Origin: Podarcis tiliguerta
Taxonomy: Eukaryota
Reading direction: 5' to 3' (one strand)
DNA length: 64,000 bases
Assembly: GCA_965153285.1 (NCBI GenBank)
Contig: OZ229112.1
The notes under the pieces are model-generated. The model was not told the origin of the DNA and ran no database searches. It was given only the letters and a program-made list of their open reading frames with translations. Of this stretch, positions 632 through 64,000 are shown in pieces (position 1 is the first letter of the stretch; every line of letters starts with the position of its first letter). The position numbers were made by a program, and so were the translations under genes.

Positions 632-44163
<43,532 letters not shown>

Positions 44164-45780
44164 CCAGCATTTAAAAATGCTAATAAACAGGTACAGCTGA
44201 GGAAGTGGTAGAACTAAGGATATCTGCTTTCTGCTGCTATTTACAAATGAGAATACGTTCTGATTTGGAAAAAGTATAGCAAAAACAAACTGAACATTTC
44301 TTTGAAAGAAGTATGTATTTTAAACTTTTGCTATTTATTGCCCTCCAAGTAGGTTATACATTTCAATTCACTTTGTTCAGTTGGTATTGAAGATTGTATA
44401 AATGGAAATTCTTGATTTGAAGAAATGTTACTGTAATTTTGGACAGTCAGTAACCTCTATTTGATTAAAATTGATAGAATTTTTAATGTAACAGACTGAG
44501 AACAGAACTCCTATTTTTGAATGAGCAAGGTACAGTACATTTGTATAGAGTGTAGTATCTGTGTTTTGCAGGATATTAGCAGAGTGTGGCAGTAAATGCC
44601 ATTGAGAACAAATGCAAAATTCCAAACATTGCTAATAAGATGTTTAATTTCAGTAGTAATTGGGCACACAGCTTTGTACAAACAAACCTAGTGCAGCTTG
44701 TTGGTTTATCTAGGTTCAGCCAGAGAGAAAAATCACACTATGTAGATATATATATCCACATTGGAAAAAGTTTGACTAATATGTCTAATTTTTCAGACCT
44801 TCATTCTCGTATCAATCAAATCTCTGTTTATTGTGCCAAAGACTGAAAACCGGTGCAGTAGAAAAGTTTTTAGTGTCAGTGCAGCATACATTTTTCAATT
44901 ATGCTTATGAATCTATGTTCTAAATATACACTGTTCTGAAAAATTATCTCTACTGGTACTTTGTAGTGAAAACAATTAATGCACTGGTGGGATCCTTAGG
45001 CAAAATGTATAATTGGGTTAAAGGATTCAAGGAAACTGCAGGAAAAGTGTGAGATTCTTATGTTTACGATGCGATCAGATTGATTGTTTATACAAATTGT
45101 GTTAAAACTGACTAAAATGTTAAAAAGTGTCTGTGTATGTATATATTATGTACACAAGCACATAAATATATACAATATTACCCAGGAATAATTTTTTTCA
45201 GGACTTTTTAGATAATACTAGATAAAATTTTAAAATGTCATACTTTTATTTTAAGGGGAAAATTGGTTATTTTCAATTATTAAAGATAAAAAGGCCAAAT
45301 CACTTTTTATGCAATCATGTTTTATACAGTGTTCTCATTGCACATTGTTTTTCTGCACTTTTTACAGTGTACTTATCAAGCTGACATAAGTCAATATATA
45401 CACCCTAAAGGAAAATCCCACTTAATGATTGTGCCTTGTAGTCTATTATTTTGTGCATCTTTAGTAAACTTAAGTTGTCTATTGTAAATGACTATATGAC
45501 TTAGGGGAATGTATTGCTGTATGTACTGCTATGGAAAAAGAAACAGTTATTTATTTGTTTATGGTACATTTACTTATTTTATACCTTTAAAACAAAGTTT
45601 GTATTAAAACAAACTTTAATACAATTTCTATTGTTTGAAAGTATAGTCCAGTTTAAAAGGAAAAAAATTACATCTTTAAACAGTTGCATGGTACAAAAAT
45701 GTAACCACACTTTTCATTTAACACCCTTTGGGAGAAGTAAGCCTCAATCTAGAGATGCAGATGTATACATACCTGTTCAA

Positions 45781-46182
45781 AAGATAACTGGTGCCGGCAG
45801 CCTAGCTGTTTGGAGGGTAAGGATCTGAATATAACCTCCCATGCTTCCACTGGTGGGGGGGGGGAATGTTAAAGGGGCTGCTTTTCCACCTCTCCAAACA
45901 GATTATTGGCTCTACCATGTTGGCAAAGCACAGCTAAACCTTCGGTTACGTGAATAGTCACAACAGCCTGACCTTTTGTGTGTGTTGTTACCAGTATTAT
46001 ATTCACGTAACCTAAAGTTTAGCTGTGTTTTGCCAACATGGTAGAGCCAATAATCTGTTTGGAGAGGTGGAAAAGCAGCCTCTTCTTTAACATCCCCCCC
46101 CCACCATCACCAGTGGCAGCATGGGAGGTGATATTCAGATCCTTACCCTCCAAGCAGCTAGGTTGACAGCACCAATTATCTT
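45781..46182. repeat. Long inverted repeat (arms 45781-45956 and 46000-46182, 43-nt spacer)
   Basis: The arms are reverse complements at roughly 90% identity; 52 bp are perfect (45876-45927 vs 46029-46080). Confidence 0.97.
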
Positions 46183-48328
46183 ACGTTTTGTGTGTGTCTA
46201 CCCTGTTGGCAACATTGACAATCTGTGTTAATATGTAGTTTCCAGTCCGGGTTTGAGGACTGCAGGTGGAAGCAACTTCAGGAACTATGTATGCAACACA
46301 GCTATGTATGCAACATGATACTCAATTCATTAGTGCACATATGTTGCTCGCAGTGGATGGCGTATGAGGTTCAAGATTAATATGCATCGTTTATCCATTT
46401 GTGTCCATGGCAATTGGTTCTTAAAATGCATTTCTGATTTTATTGCAAATACTCATAAACATCAAGATAATTCACTTTTATTTGAAGTAGACTAATCGGC
46501 GTTATGATCAGGCCAGTTTAGAATGTTTGGAGGCAGGGAAAATTCTGTTTTGGTTGGTTAGTTGCCATCACCATCTCCTCTAAATAACCCATATTGGTTT
46601 GGCTTTTAAGAAAATATCTTCAACTAAGGGTATTTGCCAAATCATGATTTACAGTAGAATAATAAATTCTACTGGCACTAGTCCTTCTTGGATACCTGTT
46701 TTCATTAGCATATTATAATTATGGGATTTGGGACACTGACTTATGTTTTTAAACATGCATTCTTACTAATATTGCAGACATTAAACATGAAAATATTTCA
46801 GCAGCCTATGTACAGTGATAGTTCATTTCACAATGGAAGCATTACAGTAGATTTATCTTGTCCATTTAAGAATTTCACCATTGATGAAGGCAATCAATTT
46901 CAAATGTGTGATTTCCTTTTGTTATCTGCATTGTTATATAAAAGAAATTGGCAAAGCAAACATGAAACCCCATTACTGTAAGTTACTCCATTTATAACTA
47001 TGTCCCACTTGGCATATATTTATGTATATACTTGTATACATCAAGTATGTGTATGTAACGTTGGAGAATGGAATAGTACACATCACCATCATAGTGTCTG
47101 AAAATTACACATTTCAGAACAAAAGATTCAATTCTTATTTGCAGTACACAAATGTATTGTTCCCCATTCATGAATAATTTTGTACTAAGAATTCACAAGC
47201 TTATTTTTTTCTAACATTATTTTGGTAATACATTTGTGTAGAAACACTTAAAACTGTAATTGTGCTAGATATACTATATAAGTGCTTTAAATTGCATTGG
47301 TTTGACTTAAATTACTGTCATTGGTTAGATTTGACCGATTTGCAAAAAATTTATTGTACCAACACAGAAGAGCTTTTGATTTAGCACATTTTAATATAAG
47401 CAATAAATACTGGTTCACTAACTTTTGGAGAGGGAAACCATAATGAAATGTGTTATGGATAAAACTATTGAGAGCAAAGTAATATTTATTTTATGGCACA
47501 TTTACATGGAAAATACTATGTAGACACTCTTTCTGTTGGTAATTACAGATATTCACACAAGCAATTATCTTACAAACTTGGCAGTAATGAAAACAAATGT
47601 AAAATGCAGTCTACTGATACAGCTTCTGATACAGAGCGGTCCATTAGTTCCATAATGCTGAACATTAAATTACTTCAATATTAACCAGTGGTTACTATAC
47701 AGCGATGTCTGATAGCAGCACATTCCATTTTCTTTGATTGGGAAATAAGTTCATTTTCACTCCAGTAATCAATCCCTTGTTTGGCTAAGCGGGTTTGAAA
47801 TTTAATTGTTTCCCAGGGATTAAGCTTGAATTACATTGGTATAATACTGGGTACTGAAGAAATGATCTTTATCATTGTGGTATGAGTAGCGATGCAGCTT
47901 TACAAAACCCGTCTTCCTATAGTACTGCTGTGATGTAAACTTGCACAAAATTATTCGTACCATTCTGTTAATTTTTCCATGTGTGGTTAATTCAGTTGTT
48001 TAATACTTTTATCTTAGTTTGGATTGATCTTTGTAAAATACCGATTCAAAAGCATGTAGTACTTCTCAACGTTTGAAAATGAATGGGGACATAGTTTCAG
48101 TACATAAGTCATGTGCTGTGTTACGACTCTTTGTGAAATACCAATTTGAGCTTTCAGTTTCATGAGCTTTAGTACATCTAAAGTGATATTAAGACCCCAA
48201 CCAGAACTCCATACACACAGCTCTTAAGTGTGTTGATTTCTGCAAAGAGCTGATCCTACTGTGCTGAAGAATGTGGATCCTTTGCTTTGAAGCAAGAGCT
48301 CCTGGTGGTCTATTTAATGAAAGCTTAA

Positions 48329-48484
48329 GGCCACAATCCAGTCGTGCCTTGCATCCTCAGGGCATGCAGGAGTTTCCTGCCATCCATTTCACCCACACCG
48401 GCCATCAGGCTTCCCACAACTGGAGAGGTGCACTTGTGGAACAGCTGTGTCCTAGTGTGTGTAAGGGACGGACTGGATTGAGCC
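48329..48484. mobile_element. MITE with ~22-bp imperfect TIRs in the putative PHIP 3' UTR
   Basis: ggccacaatccagtcgtgcctt ... aagggacggactggattgagcc; GC-richer island in AT-rich UTR. Confidence 0.6.
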
Positions 48485-49664
48485 TTGTTGTAAATTTTGA
48501 TGTATCAATCTTGCATTTCATGTTCTTGGACCTAAGCATTCATCTGATAAAAGGGCTGTTCAGTTTCTGCTGTAAATAATGTACATATGTTTATAATTCA
48601 AAAAAGGTGTACATTTCATATATAGTGGCCAAGTCTGAAAATTATTTCTAATATAACAAAATCTGGTATTGTGGTTTTTTTTAAATGTGCTAACTTTACA
48701 TAATTACTCTTGGAATAATGGTGAAGCAAAAAATTATTTTGTTGCTCTCATTTTCCCATTTAGTTCACAACATTTTGGAATAAAAGGTACCCTCTGTTTC
48801 AGGAAGGTTACATTTATTTCAGGATATTTTTTGTTGAAACTACCGTAGATGTGAGATGGCATTTTGAAGACAGAAATAGCATAATATTTGCTGTTAAAGA
48901 CCAAACCCCAAATCTCCCTTTTTTAAAGGGTAAATAATTTAAGGAGCTATTTATATGAAAAATCATTTTTCTTTTGATACCAAAAAGGGAGCCAAATGCT
49001 GAATATTTGAATTTTAAATAAATGCAGATAATTGCTTCAGGATATGGTATAAATTTTTGTTCATGATATAATTAGTGCTGGAAATTACTACACCTTTAAA
49101 GATACAGCACCAAATTTCTACACTTTCACATAAGACATTTAACATGGTATATTTATCTCAGATGCATGTTTTTAAAAGGATAGGCTATTGACACACATTT
49201 TGAAGTTACATTTTTGGACCATCACACTGCAAAAATTGAAAAGAAAGTTATTGAGTGAATACCTTAAATCTTGCCACTTAATGTTGAAACATATAATGTA
49301 GTGTAACTTAAGGAAATTGTCTGGAACATCTAATTTTGAAACTGACACATTTTAAAGCTTTGCTTACTTTGTACAGTATGGTGTAAATCCCAAAAATGTT
49401 CATGTAACCAACATACAGTTTTACAAGTTTAGGTTTTATCAAGGTTATTTTCTTTCTCTTCTGCTTTATCAAGTTATAAAGTGCAGTCTCACACCTGGAT
49501 GAACAGTGCCCTTTCTTTTTGTACATATTGATCGAAACTTTTATTGTTATGTGAAACACTTACGTTGGTTTTGATGAATAATACTTGGAATCCTTTTATA
49601 CAAACTAGAATGTATGTGTATGAATTACTGTCACTGCAATGTAGTAACTACAAACCTATTTTTA

Positions 49665-49670
49665 AATAAA
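49665..49670 (+). terminator. Candidate distal polyadenylation signal of PHIP
   Basis: AATAAA with downstream gtttttct...tttgcttttgtt element; interspersed repeats resume about 100 nt later. Confidence 0.55.
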
Positions 49671-51412
49671 TAGAAAACTCGTTTTTCTAAGCTGCTTTGC
49701 TTTTGTTATTAAACTAATATAAATGTGTGAAGTACACAAGTTGTGTCTAAAAACTTTCACCATGCTGCAATCCTACGTTGACCCAAAAATAAGCCCCATC
49801 ACGTTCAATGAGTCTTAGTCCCAGGTAGGTTTCTACAGGACTGCAACTTCAGTGACTTAAATATAAAGGATAGATTGGCAAAAAGAGTAACTTAGTTTCT
49901 TAACACAAATGTTCTAATGGAACTGGTAAATTTTACTACCATCATTATATGCGTGAGACAGCCTTACAAATTCTGTTATCTAGAGATGTGTGATCAACTT
50001 TCTTTCTGAAGGCACTTATTCTTAACAGGGGCATAGGCAGGTATGATAATATACTATACTATAAAATGGATATTGTGTTGGGCTAGGAGAATGAAAAACA
50101 TCCGCATCATTTCCTTGTTAGGAAAAGCTGTCCCGCCCCCATAACCTTGCTTCCTTACATTAGCAAAGCCAGAATAAATTCCACAAAAATAGCAAACTGC
50201 AGATGAAGTACAAAGTACAGGTTGGAAAATATAGAATTTTATTAAATTGGAGATTAAGAAACTATAGGCAGAGTTGTAAATTCTATCCTTTTTGTTTAAA
50301 TTGCATTCCTTAATCTGTGAAATCACTCAACACCTTGCCTAGTCTCATCACCAACACCCAAAAATTAGCAAGTTTTTCAGCAACCATGCAGTTTTACAGT
50401 ATTTCCATCCCTTACTCATAATTTCTTAACTCAGACTGGTTATATTCGAGAAATTTCTCATGTGAGGCAATAAATGCAGATCCTTATATTTGAAGGCCAG
50501 GAGCTTCTGGCATCCAAGGAATTTCTCCCCTGATAAAACTACTCTCAGCAGAGATTTCTTGAACTACACTGACAATGTGGAATTTCACCAAATGCAGTTT
50601 GTACAGTGTAAAACACTGAAAAAAGTGGTTTCTGTCATCAGCCATTAAGAAAAACCAAGTGGCCTTTATGCAATTCTTCAAACTTGGGAGTAACTGGATA
50701 TCTGGACAAAACTGTTGCCCCACATACACAGGTCTGAAAGACCTATGTGAAGAAAGCATGCCTCCATTCATTTGCAAATTGAATATAATCCACATGTACA
50801 AAGAGCTGCTGCTTCCTGTTGTAGGAGACAACTTCCAAGTTTACTTCTCTTAAGTTACCAAGCAAAAACTTTAAACTTCCTTGCTCCAGAAACATGCTAA
50901 AAGAGCAGACCAGTTCCTTAAAAACTAGTGTTCATTTAGTGATTTCACATTTATTTTAGTTTCAAATATTCGTGATTTCACTTAAAATGTGCAGTGCCTT
51001 GGAACGTAACCCCTGTGTAAACTGGGAGTTGCCTGTATTTACATTACTCTAAACGGTATATTAAAAATGTACTTGTATCTATGGCTTTCACAAGCATTCA
51101 CTAGGTTGATTCCAAAGTTTGTTTTATTCATGGAAGGAGCTGCTGATAATGGAAAGTGTCTTCTATGAACACGAGGGCTTCTTCATGACAAGAAGTTTTC
51201 TTCCAAGAAATGAAACGTAAATTGGAATCCAAGCCACAGCTTGCGTCCAAGTGCGGAGAATTACAACCCGTGCTACAATTTCATGGAATCGTTTAAAAAG
51301 TGAACAAATGTCAGTCACTTTAACATTTTGATTATGGAAATGCAAGTTAAGCTTCCCAAGAATAATGTTCTTCCCAAAGGAAAACACAATGATTCAGGAC
51401 TTCAGTAATAAA

Positions 51413-51695
51413 TCAGTTTACATTTATGTGAGCTGCTTGTTTTCTCTTCCTTTCCCCCTTTATTTCAAAAACAGCATATACCCTTGAGGAAACATAGATG
51501 GTGGCACTCTGGAGTCTCTGCTGCAAACCTAGTGAGTCTGGGGCATTGGCCAAGTGATTTTCAAGGTGGCCCTCCCACTCTTTCACTTCCTCTTCCCTTA
51601 TTAGCAAAGGCTTCCCAAGGGGCTGGCCAAGCAACTGGCAAACTTCTTGAGCTTTTTGCCGGGCACTCCCAACAGCAGCAAGACAAACCTGACGT
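51413..51695 (-). CDS. IRAK1BP1: IRAK1BP1 exon 4 (RQVCLAAVGSARQKAQEVC...HINVN*)
   Basis: ttttttgcag| acceptor; ORF 51413-51715; stop TGA. Confidence 0.93.
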
Positions 51696-54600
51696 CTGCA
51701 AAAAAACAAAGACAAATGGGAAGATTTAGCTAATTAAAGCAACAAAAAGGGAGTGTGTCAATTAAAACCATTAACCAATGTAGTACCTACTTTTGAGCAC
51801 TGTATACTCTGCTTTTCAATGAGAAAGACCTTCACAAAGCAACTAACTACGATCCTATACAGGTCTACCCAAAAGTATGTTACTTAGAGTTCATTGTGAT
51901 TAATTCCAGGTATCAGTGTAGGATTTCAGCCTCCATATATTAACCAATGTTATCCCCTCCCCTATTTTATGACATTTAAAATTTATGCAACTTAAACAAC
52001 TAAATTAACCCCCTTCCCCCACTCCACCAGTTTACATTGTTGTGAAAAACAACAACACATGTCAGATTGGAAATCCAAGGTAAGTTTGTCAAAGGCTGAG
52101 AAAGGCAAATAAAGTTCCAATCTCACACAGAACAGAGTTATTTTGTCTTTTCAGAGCAAAGAGCAAAAACCAGCTCATTGTGTCCAGAGTGAGGTGCATG
52201 CTGATGGTGGAATCTCCCATGTTCTGATATGTTAACCATTAATAAACATGTAACAAACTAATGGAAAAGTATTTTTCTTCCACAGGCAACATTTAACTTT
52301 TTTGTTAGTTTTGCATGAAAAGTTAGCTGCCCTACCCTTTGATACCATTGATCTATATTCACTCTTTGAAAGTTTTACCAACTGCATGCTTTCACAGACC
52401 CTGCTGCTGCAGTTCAACAGTTTAATAGTTCTTTATGCTTCAGATATGAATCAAGGCCTATATATACACTTAAGTGGTGTTATTATATACATGCACTGTC
52501 ATTTCAACCTTTCCATACCAGACAGGCAAAACTCTGACACTAAGCCAAAATATATGTGATTGCATTTATTTTCATTCATCTCTTCTTAGGCTGGCTTTCT
52601 CTTCCTCATAGGCTGCAATCCTGTTCCCACTTTACTGGGAGTACAGTGGAACCTCGGGTTGCGAACGTGATCTGTGCGGGAGGCACGTTTGCAACCCGCA
52701 GTGTCCCATCTGCGCATGTGATTTGGCACTTCTGCGCATGTGCAAAGCGTGATTTAGTGCTTCTGCGCATGTACCGAAACCTAGAAGTAACCCATTCTGG
52801 TACTTCCGGGTTTGCCGTGGTCTGTAACTTGAAAACACGCAACCCACAGTGTTCGCAACCCGAGGTATGACTCTACCGGATTTCACGGTTATTCATGTAC
52901 CAGCACTGGGGGTGCTTGACTGAATGATTTGTCATCTTAATGATACATTCCAATTTAGAACCTTCAGAAGAATATGGAGCCTTGTTTTGCTTTTTTGTCT
53001 ACTTTAATATTATATCAACCTCTTTCTTGGGGGATTTGCTCCTGCCATGGCGCTTGGCTTAGTGCTTCTGGTCTGCTTCTCTCCAAGTCACAAGTAGCAA
53101 TCAAGGTTTGTTCTTGGTTTACTGTTCATGGTTTATTTGGGGAAAACAAAAGATGAGCTTGGATTCTTACATAATACAGCTTGCTTTGCAGCAACGGGAC
53201 AAAAGTAAAACACCTGCCGTTTCCAACTGTATGCACTAGCACATTCATTTTACACCCTCATTTATTTTAATGATGGTTTACTATTATGTAGGAGCCATAT
53301 CTATACAAACATGTGTATTCTATCAGCTGTTTTCTTGGACTGGTCAACAAAATAGAAGCTTTGGCTACTTATTAGAGAACAGATTCCCAGAGGCATGGCA
53401 CTGGTAAATCAAGCTAGCGAGACCTAACTTTCTGGTAAAAGGAGGAAGACATAACTTACCGAAGGGCATCTACAGCCTCCACTGTATGGTAAAAGTGAGG
53501 TGGGCTGATGATAACAGAGCTACCTAGCTTCTCAACAAGGAAGTTACAGACGTCTTGCATTTTGCCGAAATCACTGAATGTAATGCAGACCTATATGGGA
53601 ATGTAAAAATTTGTAAGCCTTTTCAGTGCCTTAGCTAAAAATTGGCTAAAGATGAATAATACAAAATCAATTATAATATGCATTTTGTACAAAGCTAAAT
53701 TAGATTATACTTTCATTTATATGCTACCTCTGTACAGTAACTTCCAAGTACCTATGCTACAGAACTGCCTTAGAAGTAAACAGTGAACAGTGCATGAGAA
53801 GTCCCGTTGTGTTAGGGCTGTCATACGTCTGGAATTGACGTCTCGGTGTTTTTGTAAAAAGCTCAACAATTTCAGTGGCGTCCTTTTAGGAAGTGGCCTT
53901 CCTAAAAAAAAAAAGAGCTCAACAACTTTTGGGGTGTCCAGGTTTTTACTATCCTACACTCTGTTCAATAAGACTTCCAGATAAGCATGTATGGGATTGA
54001 AGCCTAGATCCAAGGCTGCAATTCTAAACACAATTCACATAAAGAAAGCTTTTCTTAGTTTCAATATGAATGTTTTGAGGCCTGGATTGTAAATTTGGTA
54101 GATGTTTCAATTTCTGCTTCCATAAATAACTACACCAGTATCTCATTATCAAGCGTGCTGTGATGCTGACATAGTTTTGTAAGGCTATTAAGATGGTATT
54201 GCAGGAAAATATTTCAGGAGTGGGATGGCAAAAAAGATTATAGATAACCACAAGCTGTAATACTGTAATGCATGGGTGTGGAACCATTTTCACCCTTGAG
54301 CAGAAAAGCATATTAGGACATAGTTTCACATTTCTTGTTTAATGCTCAAGATATATAAAAAAATGGTATTTGAGACATATGACCAATACTCTTACTTAAG
54401 ACACTTGCCTCTGCTTCCATCTTATACACATTGTCTATTCTACTAAAGTTCTTTGTCACAGTCATGTCGTTCTCCTAGGGAAAAAAAAAACAGCTTTAAG
54501 TACAAAAGTAAGGAAGAGAATGCTTTTCAGTGAAATTATGGTTGCTTAACTAGTACTAAGCAACGCAGCAGAGTTCATGGTACACTATTTCAAGGTAAAA

Positions 54601-55441
54601 ATAAAAAAATCCAGTTTAGCATAGATGAGTAAAACTTGTCTTCACCCACAATTACTGTATCAAATACTACTCTGGACTGTTAACCCAACCTAAGTAGAGC
54701 ATGAAATCATTTGTCATCCAGCCTGTTACTCCGTAAATATATCTCGTTGCGTTGAATACAGAGAGCAATTTTTAAAACCTGGTTGCCATCTAAGCAACCT
54801 GTGTGCAGCCTTAAGTTCACTGACAGCAGGGAAGGACGGAAATGCAGCAAATACACAATCAGGAAAGACACAGTAAACTTGGGCTTGTAGCCAAGGGTTT
54901 CCTCTCTAGCCTAATCATTCCACTGCGGTTTGAATGCTTCTCCTAATGGTATGGTGTGGAACCACTGCCCCTCCACATGATGCAGCTTGGCTTCCATCAG
55001 ATCAGTGGTGTTGAGGATATCTCTGGGGGTACAAGCGGCCCACCCTTCCCACCAAACTATAAGAGCGAAAGCTTTTCCGGTGCAGAAGATGTGGTGTAGC
55101 CACAGAGAAAGCCATTGAGCTGAGCGCATGCGCAAGAGGTGGGTCAGCTCTCCTCACCCTTTACCCACCGAGATTCCTCCGCGCTGCCGGGCGCTCTGAA
55201 CGACATAATCCAGCCTCCGAGTGACGCTGCTCCGCGCCGCTCCGGCCTCTCCTTTCTTGCTCTTCAGGTAAACGGTGACTTTCGCCCGGTCCGGCCTAGC
55301 GCTGAGCTCCGAGGTGCCGCTGACATGAACTTCCCTCGCCGGCGGCCTCGGGACTTCATTCTCCCGGCTGTTGTCCCCCGCGGCGGGCGGAGGGACCAGC
55401 TCGGCAAACACCCGGGCTGGAGAAAGCGGCGGTAACGGCAT
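51413..55441 (-). CDS. IRAK1BP1: IRAK1BP1 (interleukin-1 receptor-associated kinase 1-binding protein 1, SIMPL domain), 4 exons, 250 aa
   Basis: Exons 55441-55169, 54474-54409, 53590-53460, 51695-51413 sum to 753 nt. Motifs REVHVSGTSELSARPDRA, VCITFSDFGKMQDVCNFLVEKL and KAQEVCQLLGQPLGKPLLIREEE are recognised. The gene is tail-to-tail with PHIP. Confidence 0.94.
52644..52873. mobile_element. Tigger/pogo-type MITE
   Basis: TIRs cagtggaacctcgggttgcgaac / gttcgcaacccgaggtatgactc with TA flanks; internal ctgcgcatg x3. Confidence 0.82.
53460..53590 (-). CDS. IRAK1BP1: IRAK1BP1 exon 3 (VCITFSDFGKMQDVCNFLVEKLGSSVIISPPHFYHTVEAVDAL)
   Basis: atag| ... |gtaagt; 131 nt. Confidence 0.93.
54409..54474 (-). 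CDS. IRAK1BP1: IRAK1BP1 exon 2 (ENDMTVTKNFSRIDNVYKMEAE)
   Basis: Acceptor (t)10ccctag; donor GAG|gcaagt (GC type); 66 nt. Confidence 0.9.
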
Positions 55442-61096: not shown

Positions 61097-63007
61097 CATA
61101 GAATCATAGAATCATAGAGTTGGAAGAGACCACAAGGGTCATCGAGTCCAACCCCCTGCCAAGCAGGAAACACCATCAGAGCACTCCTGACATATGGTTG
61201 TCAAGCCTCTGCTTAAAGACCTCCAAAGAAGGAGACTCCACCACACTCCTTGGCAGCAAATTCCACTGTCGAACAGCTCTTACTGTCAGGAAGTTCTTCC
61301 TAATGTTTAGGTGGAATCTTCTTTCTTGTAGTTTGTATCCATTGCTCCGTGTCCGCTTCTCTGGAGCAGCAGAAAAACAACCTTTCTCCCTCCTCTATGT
61401 GACATCCTTTTATATATTTGAACATGGCTATCATATCACCCCTTAACCTCCTCTTCTCCAGGCTAAACATGCCCAGCTCCCTTAGCCGATCCTCATAAGG
61501 CATTGTTTCCAGGCCTTTGACCATTTTGGTTGCCCTCCTCTGTACACGTTCTAGTTTGTCAGTGTCCTTCTTGAACTGTGGTGCCCAGAACTGGACACAG
61601 TACTCCAGGTGAGGTCTGACCAGAGCAGAATACAGTGGCACTATAACTTCCCTTGATCTAGATGCTATACTCCTATTGATGCAGCCCAGAATTGCATTGG
61701 CTTTTTTAGCTGCCGCGTCACACTGTTGGCTCATGTTAAGTTTGTGGTCAACCAAGACTCCTAGATCCTTTTCACATGTACTGCTCTCAAGCCAGGTGTC
61801 ACCCATCTTGTATTTGTGCCTCTCATTTTTTTTGCCCAAGTGCAATACTTTACATTTCTCCCTGTTAAAATTCATCTTGTTTGTTTTGGCCCAGTTCTCT
61901 AATCTGTCAAGGTCGTTTTGAAGTGTGATCCTGTCTTCTGGGGTGTTAGCCACCCCTCCCAGTTTGGTGTCATCTGCAAATTTGATCAGGATGCCCTTGA
62001 GTCCATCATCCAAGTCGTTGATAAAGATGTTGAATAAGACCGGGCCCAAGACAGAACCCTGTGGCACCCCACTAGTCACTCTTCTCCAGGATGAAGAGGA
62101 ACCATTGATGAGCACCCTTTGGGTCCGGTCAGTCAGCCAGTTACAAATCCACTGAGTGGTAGCATAGTCAAGACCGCATTTTACCAGCTTCTTTACAAGA
62201 ATATCATGGGGCACCTTGTCAAATGCCTTGCTGAAATCAAGGTAGACTACATCCACTGCGTTCCCTTCATCTACCAGGCTTGTAATTCTGTCAAAAAATG
62301 AGATCAGGTTAGTCTGACATGACTTATTTTTCAGAAATCCATGCTGACTATTGGTGATCACAGCATTCCTTTCTAGGTGCTCACAGACTGTTTGCTTAAT
62401 GATCTGCTCCAGAATCTTCCCTGGTATTGATGTTAGACTGACTGGGCGGTAATTATTTGGGTCCTCTCTTTTCCCCTTTTTGAAAATAGGGACAACATTT
62501 GCCCTCCTCCAGTCTGCCGGGACTTCGCCTGTTCTCCAGGAATTCTCAAAGATGACTGCCAGTGGTTCTGAGATCACATCTGCCAGTTCTTTTAATACTC
62601 TTGGATGCAGTTCATCTGGCCCTGGAGACTTGAATACATCTAAACTAGCCAAGTATTCTTGTACTATCTCCTTAGTTATTCTGGGCTGTATTTCCTCTGC
62701 TGAATCATTTCCTCCAAATTCTTCAGGTCGGGCATTGTTTTCTTTATCGGAGAAGACTGAGGCAAAGAAGGCATTGAGGAGTTCAGCCCTTTCTGTGTCC
62801 CCTGTTTGCATTTCACCATCTTCTCCTCTGAGTGACCCCACTGTTTCTTTGTTCTTCCTTTTGCTACGAACATACCCATAGAAGCCTTTTTTGTTGCTTT
62901 TAACCTCTCTAGCAAGCCTGAGTTCATTCTGTGCTTTAGCTTTTCTGACTTTGTGTCTACACGTGCTGGCTATTTGTTTGAATTCCTCTTTGGTGGTTTC
63001 CCCCCTT
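61097..63007 (-). mobile_element. CR1 LINE, 5'-truncated, young (ORF2 reverse transcriptase region plus 3' tail)
   Basis: ORF 61300-63027 has the CR1 RT motifs [44 protein letters not shown] and FADD (61969-61980). The 3' tail (ATTCTATG)n is at 61097-61117. Confidence 0.96.
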
Positions 63008-64000
63008 GCTATGTACAGAGCTACCAAGAAGGCAAGAGAACCTGGCTATCCATTCATATCCATAATAGCAACTGAAATGAAAACTTTTTAATTGAAGGTG
63101 ATGGTTCCATGCCCTGGTCTATTCCACGTGTATCTCTGGACATTGGGGCTTTATTCTCCTCCGCTGAGCCCTAAGGTGTCACCTCTGCTGCCAGATTGAA
63201 GGCCAGTCCACAGACTCCCTGAGGAGAGATCCAAGCTCTGAAAACCCTAATACCTCAAAGGAGTCAACAGTTGCAGAAGAAGGCACCAGAAATAGTTAGG
63301 AGGCAGTGAATGACTGGCTATGCCTTCTATGAAACTCAGCCAGTTGCTCCAGGATCTGAGACAATGGGATGTTTCACTTCAGCTTCAGGAGCACTGTCCA
63401 TGGTGCTAGAGGCACACCTTGATCTCTGTCCATGGTTCTGACTTTTGTCTTGCCCTGCCTTGCTGTCCTGCCTGTCTAAGGAACCAGAAAGTACTGACTG
63501 CTCCCCATTGACTCCCTTTGGTGAAGGCACATTGCTGGTGTGAAACTCCAGAGTAACTCATGGATAAAAACAATTGATTATTATATAAAAACCTGTGTAT
63601 GTCTATATCAATCACAGACATCCACATCTGCTTCTTTTACAGTAAGAAAAGGAACAAGGTTTTAAGCTGCCTTGGCTACGTTTAGACTGCCAGGGTGCGG
63701 AGAAATATAAGGCAAAGCATCAGACCAAAAACAGAGAACGGTCAGGGACAGTCTTCCGAATGAGTTATCATCATTGGCAAAGGAAATAATGGGATACCAG
63801 ACCATCACAAATTTATTAGTAAATATTTAGAACATGATCCAAACAAAGTTAAGCACTTAGGTTTAATTTTATTTTGGCTGTGCTCATTTAACTTTGATTT
63901 TCTTAGCTTTTCCTTCTTTTCTCCTGAGTTCAGGAGAGCCTTTGGCCTTCCAGAGGTTGCTGAACTACAACTCCTACCATCCCTAGTCATGGGTCAGGCT

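What the first reader, a model, noticed from the sequence alone, without database searches (positions are those of the whole stretch)
45781..46182. ~180-bp fold-back hairpin embedded in the putative PHIP 3' UTR
Seen: 45781-45956 is the reverse complement of 46000-46182 at about 90% identity, with a 52-bp perfect stem (45876-45927 / 46029-46080), several G-U-compatible changes and only a 43-nt spacer. It lies 1.6 kb past the stop codon. It resembles no other repeat in the window and shows no TA or 8-bp TSD. Established: long dsRNA in 3' UTRs is a substrate for ADAR A-to-I editing, Staufen binding, paraspeckle retention and Dicer hairpin endo-siRNA production. In primates this role is played by inverted Alu pairs. 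Inference: this could be a lizard-specific, non-SINE dsRNA module regulating a dosage-sensitive chromatin reader, or a hairpin small-RNA source. Because it is strand-symmetric, read-through from convergent IRAK1BP1 would fold as well.
Basis: partly seen in the sequence, partly recalled or inferred. Interest (0 to 1): 0.8.

Follow-up and report, generated by a model that had tools for sequence, protein, structure and literature searches.

The report
Unique 400-bp palindrome after PHIP
A real, single-copy 400-base palindrome lies 1.6 kb after the stop codon of the lizard PHIP gene; it looks like an old copying accident or a transposon relic, it would make any RNA that carries it fold into a long double strand, and nothing here shows that it was selected to do so.

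Summary
Arms 45781-45956 and 46000-46182 are reverse complements: 165 of 176 aligned bases match, there are four small indels, a perfect 52-bp core and a 43-nt spacer. Either strand folds at about -311 kcal/mol (z = -30). It starts 1,618 nt after the PHIP stop, it is the only large inverted repeat in 64 kb, and it matches no Rfam family.

The regulatory reading could not be tested. So I have no RNA, RNA-editing, small-RNA, copy-number or orthologue data.

The sequence itself shows no bias toward keeping base pairs. Of 11 arm differences, 3 give G·U, 4 give A·C and 4 are transversions.

My best reading (about 0.5) is a one-step local inverted duplication by replication template switching. An 18-nt piece of the spacer recurs directly after the right arm, next to a 16-nt patch copied from the arm. 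The IR (inverted repeat) ends are not flanked by a target-site duplication.

The main rival (about 0.3) is a MITE (miniature inverted-repeat transposon) or fold-back transposon. The unit is GC-rich (0.47 against 0.33 around it), and a TA-flanked reading remains possible.

This is an ordinary kind of feature, with physically certain dsRNA potential if it is transcribed.

The parts
45781..45956 (.). Left arm of the inverted repeat (176 nt, GC 0.49)
45957..45999 (.). 43-nt spacer (loop); it contains the 18-nt segment 45968-45985 that recurs after the right arm
46000..46182 (.). Right arm, reverse complement of the left arm (183 nt, GC 0.46); 11 substitutions and 4 indel events relative to the left arm
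45876..45927 (.). Left half of the perfect 52-bp stem (its partner is 46029-46080)
46029..46080 (.). Right half of the perfect 52-bp stem
45968..45985 (+). Direct-repeat copy 1 (CTGACCTTTTGTGTGTGT), inside the spacer
   Evidence: (D1)
46180..46197 (+). Direct-repeat copy 2 (CTTACGTTTTGTGTGTGT, 16/18). It abuts the outer end of the right arm and overlaps it by 3 nt. Together the two copies bracket the right arm like a target-site or template-switch duplication
   Evidence: (D1)
46197..46212 (+). 16-nt patch (TCTACCCTGTTGGCAA) matching 15 of 16 bases of left-arm positions 45911-45926, placed directly after direct-repeat copy 2; read here as a patchwork junction
   Evidence: D3; E 0.003 in the local search
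43522..44163 (+). Context: last coding ORF of PHIP, ending ...KAKANLIGW and then the stop
51413..51715 (-). Context: last coding exon of the convergent gene IRAK1BP1 (SIMPL domain), 5.2 kb from the hairpin

Best explanation
The hairpin is an old local inverted duplication, not a designed RNA element. During replication or break repair, the growing strand passed the present left arm and about 30-40 nt beyond it, then looped back on itself. A TATT/AATA microhomology lies at the inner junction. The strand copied about 176 nt of its own sequence backwards, from 45956 to 45781, and returned to the original template slightly upstream of where it had left, through a CT(T) microhomology. Returning upstream re-copies a short segment. 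That explains why 18 nt of the spacer reappear directly after the new arm, next to a 16-nt patch templated from the arm. The two arms have since drifted about 6% apart without regard to base pairing. If the long PHIP 3' UTR runs through it, which was not shown here, the RNA must fold into a duplex of about 180 bp. By established knowledge, such a duplex would be bound and edited by ADAR and could bind Staufen or be retained in the nucleus. That would be a by-product, not a demonstrated function. Shown: the structure, its uniqueness within the window, the junction anatomy and the substitution pattern. Inferred: the mechanism, the age and any effect on RNA.
For: The inverted copy lies 43 nt from its source and is coextensive with it. 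There is no other copy of the arm or of its terminal 18 nt in 64 kb, and it is the only inverted repeat with arms longer than 38 nt in the window. The right arm is bracketed by an 18-nt direct repeat, 16/18 identical (45968-85 and 46180-97). Directly after it comes a 15/16 match to arm positions 45911-26 (local E 0.011 for the 12-nt core and 0.003 for the patch). The left flank shows only one 9-nt chance hit to the hairpin. No target-site duplication lies outside the ends of the repeat. A single arm has no structure of its own (z = -0.2) and no tRNA, 7SL or 5S-like head. The arm differences look like drift: 3 G·U, 4 A·C, 4 transversions and 4 indels. Template switching that makes reverse-complement copies, including loop-back of the growing strand, is a documented way to create perfect stems in one event (PMC10710096, read; PMC8794818 and PMC5453318, listed).
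Against: No outgroup 'empty site' could be fetched, so the ancestral state is unknown. The documented template-switch hairpins that paper selected have stems of 30-55 nt, and this one is three to five times longer. Most of the 18-nt direct repeat is low-complexity T4(GT)4, which is easy to match by chance. The 14 nt between it and the right arm (45986-45999) are not explained. The unit is a compositional outlier: GC 0.47 against 0.33 +/- 0.04 in the surrounding 7 kb, and only about 2% of local 176-nt windows reach the left arm's GC. That fits foreign DNA better, although the 200 nt to the right are also GC-richer (0.36-0.48). Genome-wide copy number is unknown.
Confidence: 0.5

Rival explanations
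1. It is one copy of a palindromic non-autonomous DNA transposon (a MITE or fold-back element whose terminal inverted repeats span almost its whole length). It inserted as a unit into the PHIP 3' region, possibly at a TA dinucleotide, and rides along as a passenger.
For: Whole-length inverted repeats with a short spacer are the typical MITE shape. GC is 0.47 against 0.33 locally, with a sharp step on the left side. A TA sits symmetrically at 45785-6 and 46177-8, so TA|ACTGGTGCC...GCACCAAT|TA is a possible Tc1/mariner-type reading. Earlier notes of this scan, which I did not check, describe abundant and still active TA-inserting MITEs in this genome. The absence of a second copy in 64 kb says little for a family of up to a few thousand copies.
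Against: The TA reading needs four more bases on each side (AAGA/TCTT) to be palindromic by chance or by target preference. No TSD of any other length flanks the repeat. The termini do not start with a motif I recognise from memory as a Tc1/mariner, hAT, piggyBac or Harbinger terminus (CAGT, CAGG, TAGG and the like); no transposon library was available to test this. The spacer segment and the arm patch that recur at the right junction would both have to be coincidences.
Confidence: 0.3
2. Whatever its origin, the hairpin is maintained by selection as a dsRNA module of the PHIP 3' UTR (for ADAR editing, Staufen binding or nuclear retention) or as a source of hairpin small RNAs.
For: It is a very stable duplex of about 180 bp on either strand, in the position where a long PHIP 3' UTR is expected. 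It has survived long enough for the arms to diverge 6% without being deleted, although long palindromes are fragile. A related species (organism B) holds 42-46% of the sampled 31-mers of 45600-46400 in its DNA runs. Six small runs, which the tool only guesses to be RNA, hold 31-34%. That hints at transcription but does not show it.
Against: The arm differences show no excess of pair-preserving changes: 3 G·U against 4 A·C, 4 transversions and 4 indel events. There is no match to any miRNA or other Rfam family, even at E of 1 or less. No expression, editing, small-RNA or covariation data could be obtained. Many AATAAA/ATTAAA signals lie between the stop codon and the hairpin (44182, 44464, 45279, 45603), so short UTR isoforms would exclude it.
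Confidence: 0.1
3. Two members of one interspersed repeat family (a SINE-like retroposon) inserted independently, head to head, like an inverted Alu pair. The 18-nt direct repeat would be the TSD of the right-hand copy.
For: The right arm is bracketed by a 16/18 direct repeat of a length typical for LINE-mediated insertion. The arms are of SINE-like size.
Against: There is no third copy in 64 kb, so two hits within 30 nt of each other would be very improbable. The two copies are coextensive to within 3 nt, yet they have no tRNA, 7SL or 5S-type head and no A-rich or simple-repeat tail next to the supposed TSD (the insert starts TGTTACCAGTATTA). The left arm has no TSD.
Confidence: 0.05
4. It is an assembly artefact: a fold-back chimera of a long read.
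For: Palindromic chimeras do occur in long-read data.
Against: Such artefacts give identical arms, whereas these arms differ at 11 bases and 4 indels. The locus lies inside a contig. Runs from two studies of organism A hold 61-82% of the stretch's sampled words.
Confidence: 0.02

Closest known systems
Template-switch mutations that create RNA hairpins in one step (Loytynoja and Goldman 2017, PMC5453318; Monttinen and Loytynoja, PMC8794818; de novo miRNAs, PMC10710096)
   Same: A reverse-complement copy of adjacent sequence is placed a short spacer away and gives an instant near-perfect stem in a transcribed region. The junctions show microhomology, and a short direct duplication is what the four-point model predicts when the return point lies upstream of the departure point.
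   Different: The arms here are about 176-183 nt, against the 30-55-nt stems that work selected. The event could not be polarised with an outgroup. There is no evidence that the product is processed into small RNAs.
Inverted Alu pairs (IRAlus) in primate 3' UTRs (own knowledge: Chen, DeCerbo and Carmichael 2008; STAU1 binding to IRAlus, Elbarbary et al. 2013)
   Same: A long intramolecular dsRNA of a few hundred nt in a 3' UTR. The expected consequences are the same: ADAR hyper-editing, paraspeckle retention and Staufen binding.
   Different: It is not made of two SINE insertions. There is no Pol III head, no tail and no other family member in the window. The spacer is much shorter. Editing and retention are untested here.
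MITE or fold-back transposons, and MITE-derived hairpin RNAs such as MADE1 giving mir-548 (own knowledge: Piriyapongsa and Jordan 2007)
   Same: A near-complete palindrome with a short loop, GC content distinct from its surroundings, and a TA at both ends in one possible reading.
   Different: No second copy was seen, there is no unambiguous TSD, the terminal motif is unrecognised, and the right flank carries patches of hairpin-internal sequence.
Hairpin-RNA (hpRNA) endo-siRNA loci of Drosophila and mouse oocytes (own knowledge: Okamura 2008; Tam 2008; Watanabe 2008)
   Same: A long inverted repeat formed by local duplication, transcribed as one RNA, and a potential Dicer substrate.
   Different: No small-RNA data exist here, and no target gene homologous to the arms is known. 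It lies in a UTR rather than in a dedicated non-coding transcript.

Membership tests
Template-switch / snap-back inverted duplication | An inverted copy lies next to its source, coextensive with it, separated by a short spacer | tested here: met
   Arms 45781-45956 / 46000-46182, 43-nt spacer
Template-switch / snap-back inverted duplication | Junction signatures: microhomology at the switch points, and a direct duplication or templated patches at the return junction | tested here: inconclusive
   TATT/AATA at the inner junction. CT(T) overlap plus the 16/18 direct repeat 45968-85 / 46180-97 and the 15/16 patch 46197-212 at the outer junction. However, the repeat is largely T4(GT)4, and 14 nt (45986-99) remain unexplained.
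Template-switch / snap-back inverted duplication | The sequence is unique to the locus (not a dispersed repeat) | tested here: inconclusive
   Unique within 64 kb. Genome-wide copy number was not obtainable.
Template-switch / snap-back inverted duplication | An outgroup shows the ancestral state with one arm only | not testable with these tools
MITE / fold-back DNA transposon | Terminal inverted repeats | tested here: met
   The whole unit is an inverted repeat
MITE / fold-back DNA transposon | A target-site duplication directly flanking the TIRs | tested here: inconclusive
   None lies outside 45781/46182. Only a TA at 45785-6 / 46177-8 fits, and a TA is self-complementary, so it cannot be told apart from the repeat itself.
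MITE / fold-back DNA transposon | Many dispersed copies with different flanks | tested here: inconclusive
   No other copy in the window. The findings look-up by sequence was blank.
Inverted SINE pair (IRAlu-like) | Each arm is a retroposon with a Pol III-type head and a 3' tail | tested here: not met
   No tRNA, 7SL or 5S match even at E of 1 or less. There is no tail at either end.
Inverted SINE pair (IRAlu-like) | Each arm has its own TSD | tested here: inconclusive
   The right arm is bracketed by a 16/18 direct repeat; the left arm has none
miRNA / hpRNA locus | Membership of a described RNA family | tested here: not met
   No Rfam match at gathering score or at E of 1 or less
miRNA / hpRNA locus | Phased 21-23-nt reads from the arms | not testable with these tools
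ADAR-edited 3' UTR dsRNA | A long, nearly perfect intramolecular duplex | tested here: met
   About 177 predicted pairs, -312 kcal/mol, z = -30
ADAR-edited 3' UTR dsRNA | Present in the mature mRNA, with clustered A>G mismatches | not testable with these tools
The only hint is word shares in runs that the tool guesses to be RNA.

The most novel reading that the evidence does not exclude
A lacertid-specific, non-transposon inverted duplication created a 180-bp dsRNA element in one step in the long 3' UTR of PHIP. It is transcribed, hyper-edited by ADAR or diced into endo-siRNAs, and has been kept because it tunes the output of PHIP (or, through convergent read-through, of IRAK1BP1). It would be a reptile counterpart of primate IRAlu elements that arose by template switching rather than by SINE insertion.
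Probability: 0.08. Interest if true: 0.6.

Novelty: new member of a known kind. Interest (0 to 1): 0.3.

Why it matters
If the local-duplication reading is right, this is an unusually long example of a replication template switch creating a complete RNA stem in a single event, inside the 3' region of a dosage-sensitive chromatin-reader gene. It would show that long UTR dsRNA can arise in vertebrates without SINE pairs. If it turns out to be a transposon copy, it is routine. In either case its biological weight depends on whether PHIP mRNA includes it, and that is still open.

Tried and rejected

2. Orthologous DNA.
- I found IRAK1BP1 of Lacerta agilis, three Podarcis species, Zootoca and many other squamates, meaning to fetch 10-kb flanks.

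3. Protein-space proxy for copy number. ORFs across the right arm (46038-46163) and across the left flank into the left arm (45514-45825) found no candidates. This is uninformative, because not even the window's own ORFs are in that collection.

4. Exact 25-mer of the perfect stem in metagenome and viral contigs: 0 hits, as expected.

5. Findings look-ups by place, sequence, relatives and words: nothing on this element.

6. Readings considered and rejected.
- Penelope-type double-ended insertion or LINE twin priming: no retroelement tails at the outer ends, no hammerhead, no flanking TSD.
- Small inverted triplication: the right flank holds only 16- and 18-nt patches, in the wrong order for a third copy.
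- Selection for pairing: no bias toward pair-preserving changes.

After, two by-reference calls still covered them. The Rfam scan of the whole window did. So did the by-place findings look-up, which the tool itself widened to 43900-48100. Both returned nothing. Local analyses also ran over those places: the repeat finder on the whole window and GC counts.

Full report
**Observation**

The inverted repeat is real and sits where the finding says.
- The repeat finder returns three collinear inverted pairs that together span 45781-45956 and 46000-46182, with 43 nt between them.
- A gapped alignment of the left arm with the reverse complement of the right arm has 183 columns: 165 identical, 11 mismatches and 7 gap columns in 4 events.
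- The perfect 52-bp stem 45876-45927 / 46029-46080 was verified base by base and does not extend further.
- As RNA, 45770-46200 folds at -312.1 kcal/mol, against -127.6 +/- 6.1 for dinucleotide shuffles (z = -30). The minus strand folds at -310.8.
- A single arm has no structure beyond chance (z = -0.2).
- This is the only inverted repeat with arms longer than 38 nt in the 64-kb window.
- Neither arm has another match in the window at blastn word size 7.
- The terminal 18-mer has no further match in the window, even allowing 3 mismatches.

**Context**

- The + strand carries PHIP. An exon at 39834-40013 matches the solved PHIP bromodomain (3mb3, E 7e-30) better than BRWD1 (7e-16).
- The last coding ORF ends ...KAKANLIGW, with TAA at 44161-44163. 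The hairpin therefore begins 1,618 nt after the stop.
- IRAK1BP1 converges on the minus strand, from exon 1 at 55441 to the stop at 51413. Both its exons carry the SIMPL domain.
- Its last exon is 97-100% identical, and its first exon 94.5-96.7% identical, to IRAK1BP1 of Lacerta agilis, Podarcis species and Zootoca. The window therefore comes from a lacertid that differs in protein sequence from all five annotated species.
- The 7.2 kb between the two stop codons is AT-rich (GC about 0.33). It holds many AATAAA/ATTAAA hexamers on both strands, four of them between the PHIP stop and the hairpin.
- Whether PHIP mRNA reaches 45781 cannot be read from the sequence.

**What could not be done**

- The look-up of encoding contigs, which I meant to use to fetch the orthologous interval from other lizards through their IRAK1BP1 proteins, was closed.
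- The run listing gives only hints.
  - Organism A runs from two studies hold 61-82% of the sampled 31-mers of 45600-46400.
  - About ten DNA runs of a second organism, B, hold a steady 42-46%. If divergence is uniform, that corresponds to about 2.5%.
  - Six small runs (76-143 million letters, three studies), which the tool only guesses to be RNA, hold 31-34%.
  - That last point is compatible with transcription of much of the stretch but does not show it.

**Is the pairing selected?**

- The 11 substitutions between the arms are 7 transitions and 4 transversions.
- On the + strand, 3 of the transitions give G·U and 4 give A·C. On the minus strand these numbers swap.
- Together with four indel events around the G10/C9 tract, this is the pattern expected from neutral drift of two copies.
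- No Rfam family, miRNAs included, matches at E of 1 or less in 44000-52000, or at gathering score anywhere in the window.

**Origin: the case for a local template switch**

- The copy is coextensive with its neighbour and 43 nt away from it.
- No direct repeat of any length lies immediately outside 45781/46182.
- An 18-nt segment of the spacer (45968-45985, CTGACCTTTTGTGTGTGT) recurs at 46180-46197 (16/18). It overlaps the last 3 nt of the right arm, so the right arm is bracketed by a direct repeat.
- Directly after it, 46197-46212 matches left-arm positions 45911-45926 at 15 of 16 bases (local E 0.003).
- The right flank collects several short matches to the hairpin, whereas the left flank has a single 9-mer.
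- At the inner junction, the spacer ends ...AGTATTA and the right arm starts TATTCAC. The sequence TATT is complementary to AATA at the end of the left arm.
- This anatomy is what the four-point template-switch model predicts. The growing strand leaves the template just past the 18-nt segment and loops back onto itself. It copies 45956 to 45781 and returns upstream of its departure point, so it re-copies the 18 nt. A templated patch is left at the junction.
- Loop-back of the growing strand that yields perfect stems in one event is documented (PMC10710096, read; related papers are listed). That work selected stems of only 30-55 nt, so this would be an unusually long case.

**Origin: the case for a transposon**

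- The unit has GC 0.47 against 0.33 +/- 0.04 for 402-nt windows of the surrounding 7 kb. Only about 2% of local 176-nt windows reach the left arm's GC of 0.49.
- The step is sharp on the left (0.18-0.22 at 45531-45680, rising to 0.50 at 45781). On the right, however, the next 200 nt are also fairly GC-rich (0.36-0.48), which blunts the argument.
- A TA lies symmetrically inside the ends (45785-6 and 46177-8), so TA|ACTGGTGCC...GCACCAAT|TA is a possible Tc1/mariner-type reading.
  - It requires the four bases outside each TA (AAGA/TCTT) to be palindromic as well.
  - TA is self-complementary, so it cannot be distinguished from the repeat itself.
- Unchecked earlier notes of this scan report abundant TA-inserting MITEs in this genome.
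- The absence of a second copy in 64 kb is nearly uninformative for a family of a few thousand copies or fewer.

**Weighing the readings**

| Reading | Probability |
|---|---|
| Local template-switch duplication | about 0.5 |
| Palindromic transposon | about 0.3 |
| Two independent retroposon insertions | about 0.05 |
| Assembly artefact | about 0.02 |

- The two-insertion reading is unlikely because there is no third copy, no Pol III head and no tail, and yet the ends are coextensive.
- An artefact is unlikely because the arms differ at 15 places, which a fold-back chimera would not show.
- Selection for a dsRNA function is independent of origin. I give it about 0.1.

**How it works, as far as can be said**

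- At the DNA level it is a quasi-palindrome that has been tolerated long enough for 6.25% of aligned arm positions to differ (6.5% after Jukes-Cantor correction).
- That is more than the roughly 2.5% I infer between organisms A and B. I therefore predict that it predates their split, barring gene conversion between the arms.
- At the RNA level, any transcript through it on either strand must form a duplex of about 180 bp with a handful of A·C and G·U mismatches and small bulges. That much follows from the fold.
- By established knowledge of ADAR1/2, STAU1, NONO/paraspeckle retention and Dicer, such a duplex is a substrate for all of them. Which of them acts on it here, if any, is untested.

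**Novelty and score**

- Hairpins created by inverted duplication or by MITEs in UTRs are known kinds. This is a new member, notable for its length, its uniqueness in the window and its host gene.
- Interest is modest (0.3), because no evidence for function could be obtained and the substitution pattern looks neutral.
- The open, more novel reading (a non-SINE, lineage-specific UTR dsRNA regulator) keeps a probability of about 0.08.

- Two by-reference calls did cover those places: the whole-window Rfam scan, and a findings look-up that the tool widened on its own to 43900-48100. Both returned nothing.
- Local computations also ran over them: whole-window repeat finder and GC counts.
The genes were identified exon by exon, by reference.

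Noticed in passing
window 7834-7912 (+), inside a PHIP intron: A compact hairpin: 35-nt arms, 9-nt loop, 89% complementary. RNA MFE is -63 kcal/mol and z = -9.6, which is pre-miRNA size and shape. It has no Rfam match. It could be a small MITE, a template-switch product or an unannotated miRNA.
   Followed up: partly
window 61300-63027 (-): A 575-aa ORF with a reverse-transcriptase domain (RVT_1, E 5e-35). It is a LINE fragment upstream of IRAK1BP1.
   Followed up: partly
window 51413-55441 (-): IRAK1BP1 is compact here, about 4 kb from start codon to stop, with a GC-rich 5' end (GC 0.48 at 54-56 kb). It lies tail to tail with PHIP, with only 7.2 kb between the stop codons, so the two 3' UTRs may approach or overlap.
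   Followed up: partly
window 46285-46315 (+): A perfect 14-nt direct repeat, CTATGTATGCAACA, occurs twice with 17-nt spacing, about 100 nt to the right of the hairpin (D5). This is one more small local duplication in the same stretch.
   Followed up: no
I drew no conclusion from this and did not examine the stretch further.
   Followed up: no
window 15904-15941 / 17096-17133: 38-nt inverted repeats (84% complementary) lie 1,154 nt apart in a PHIP intron. They may be the termini of a DNA transposon of about 1.2 kb.
   Followed up: no
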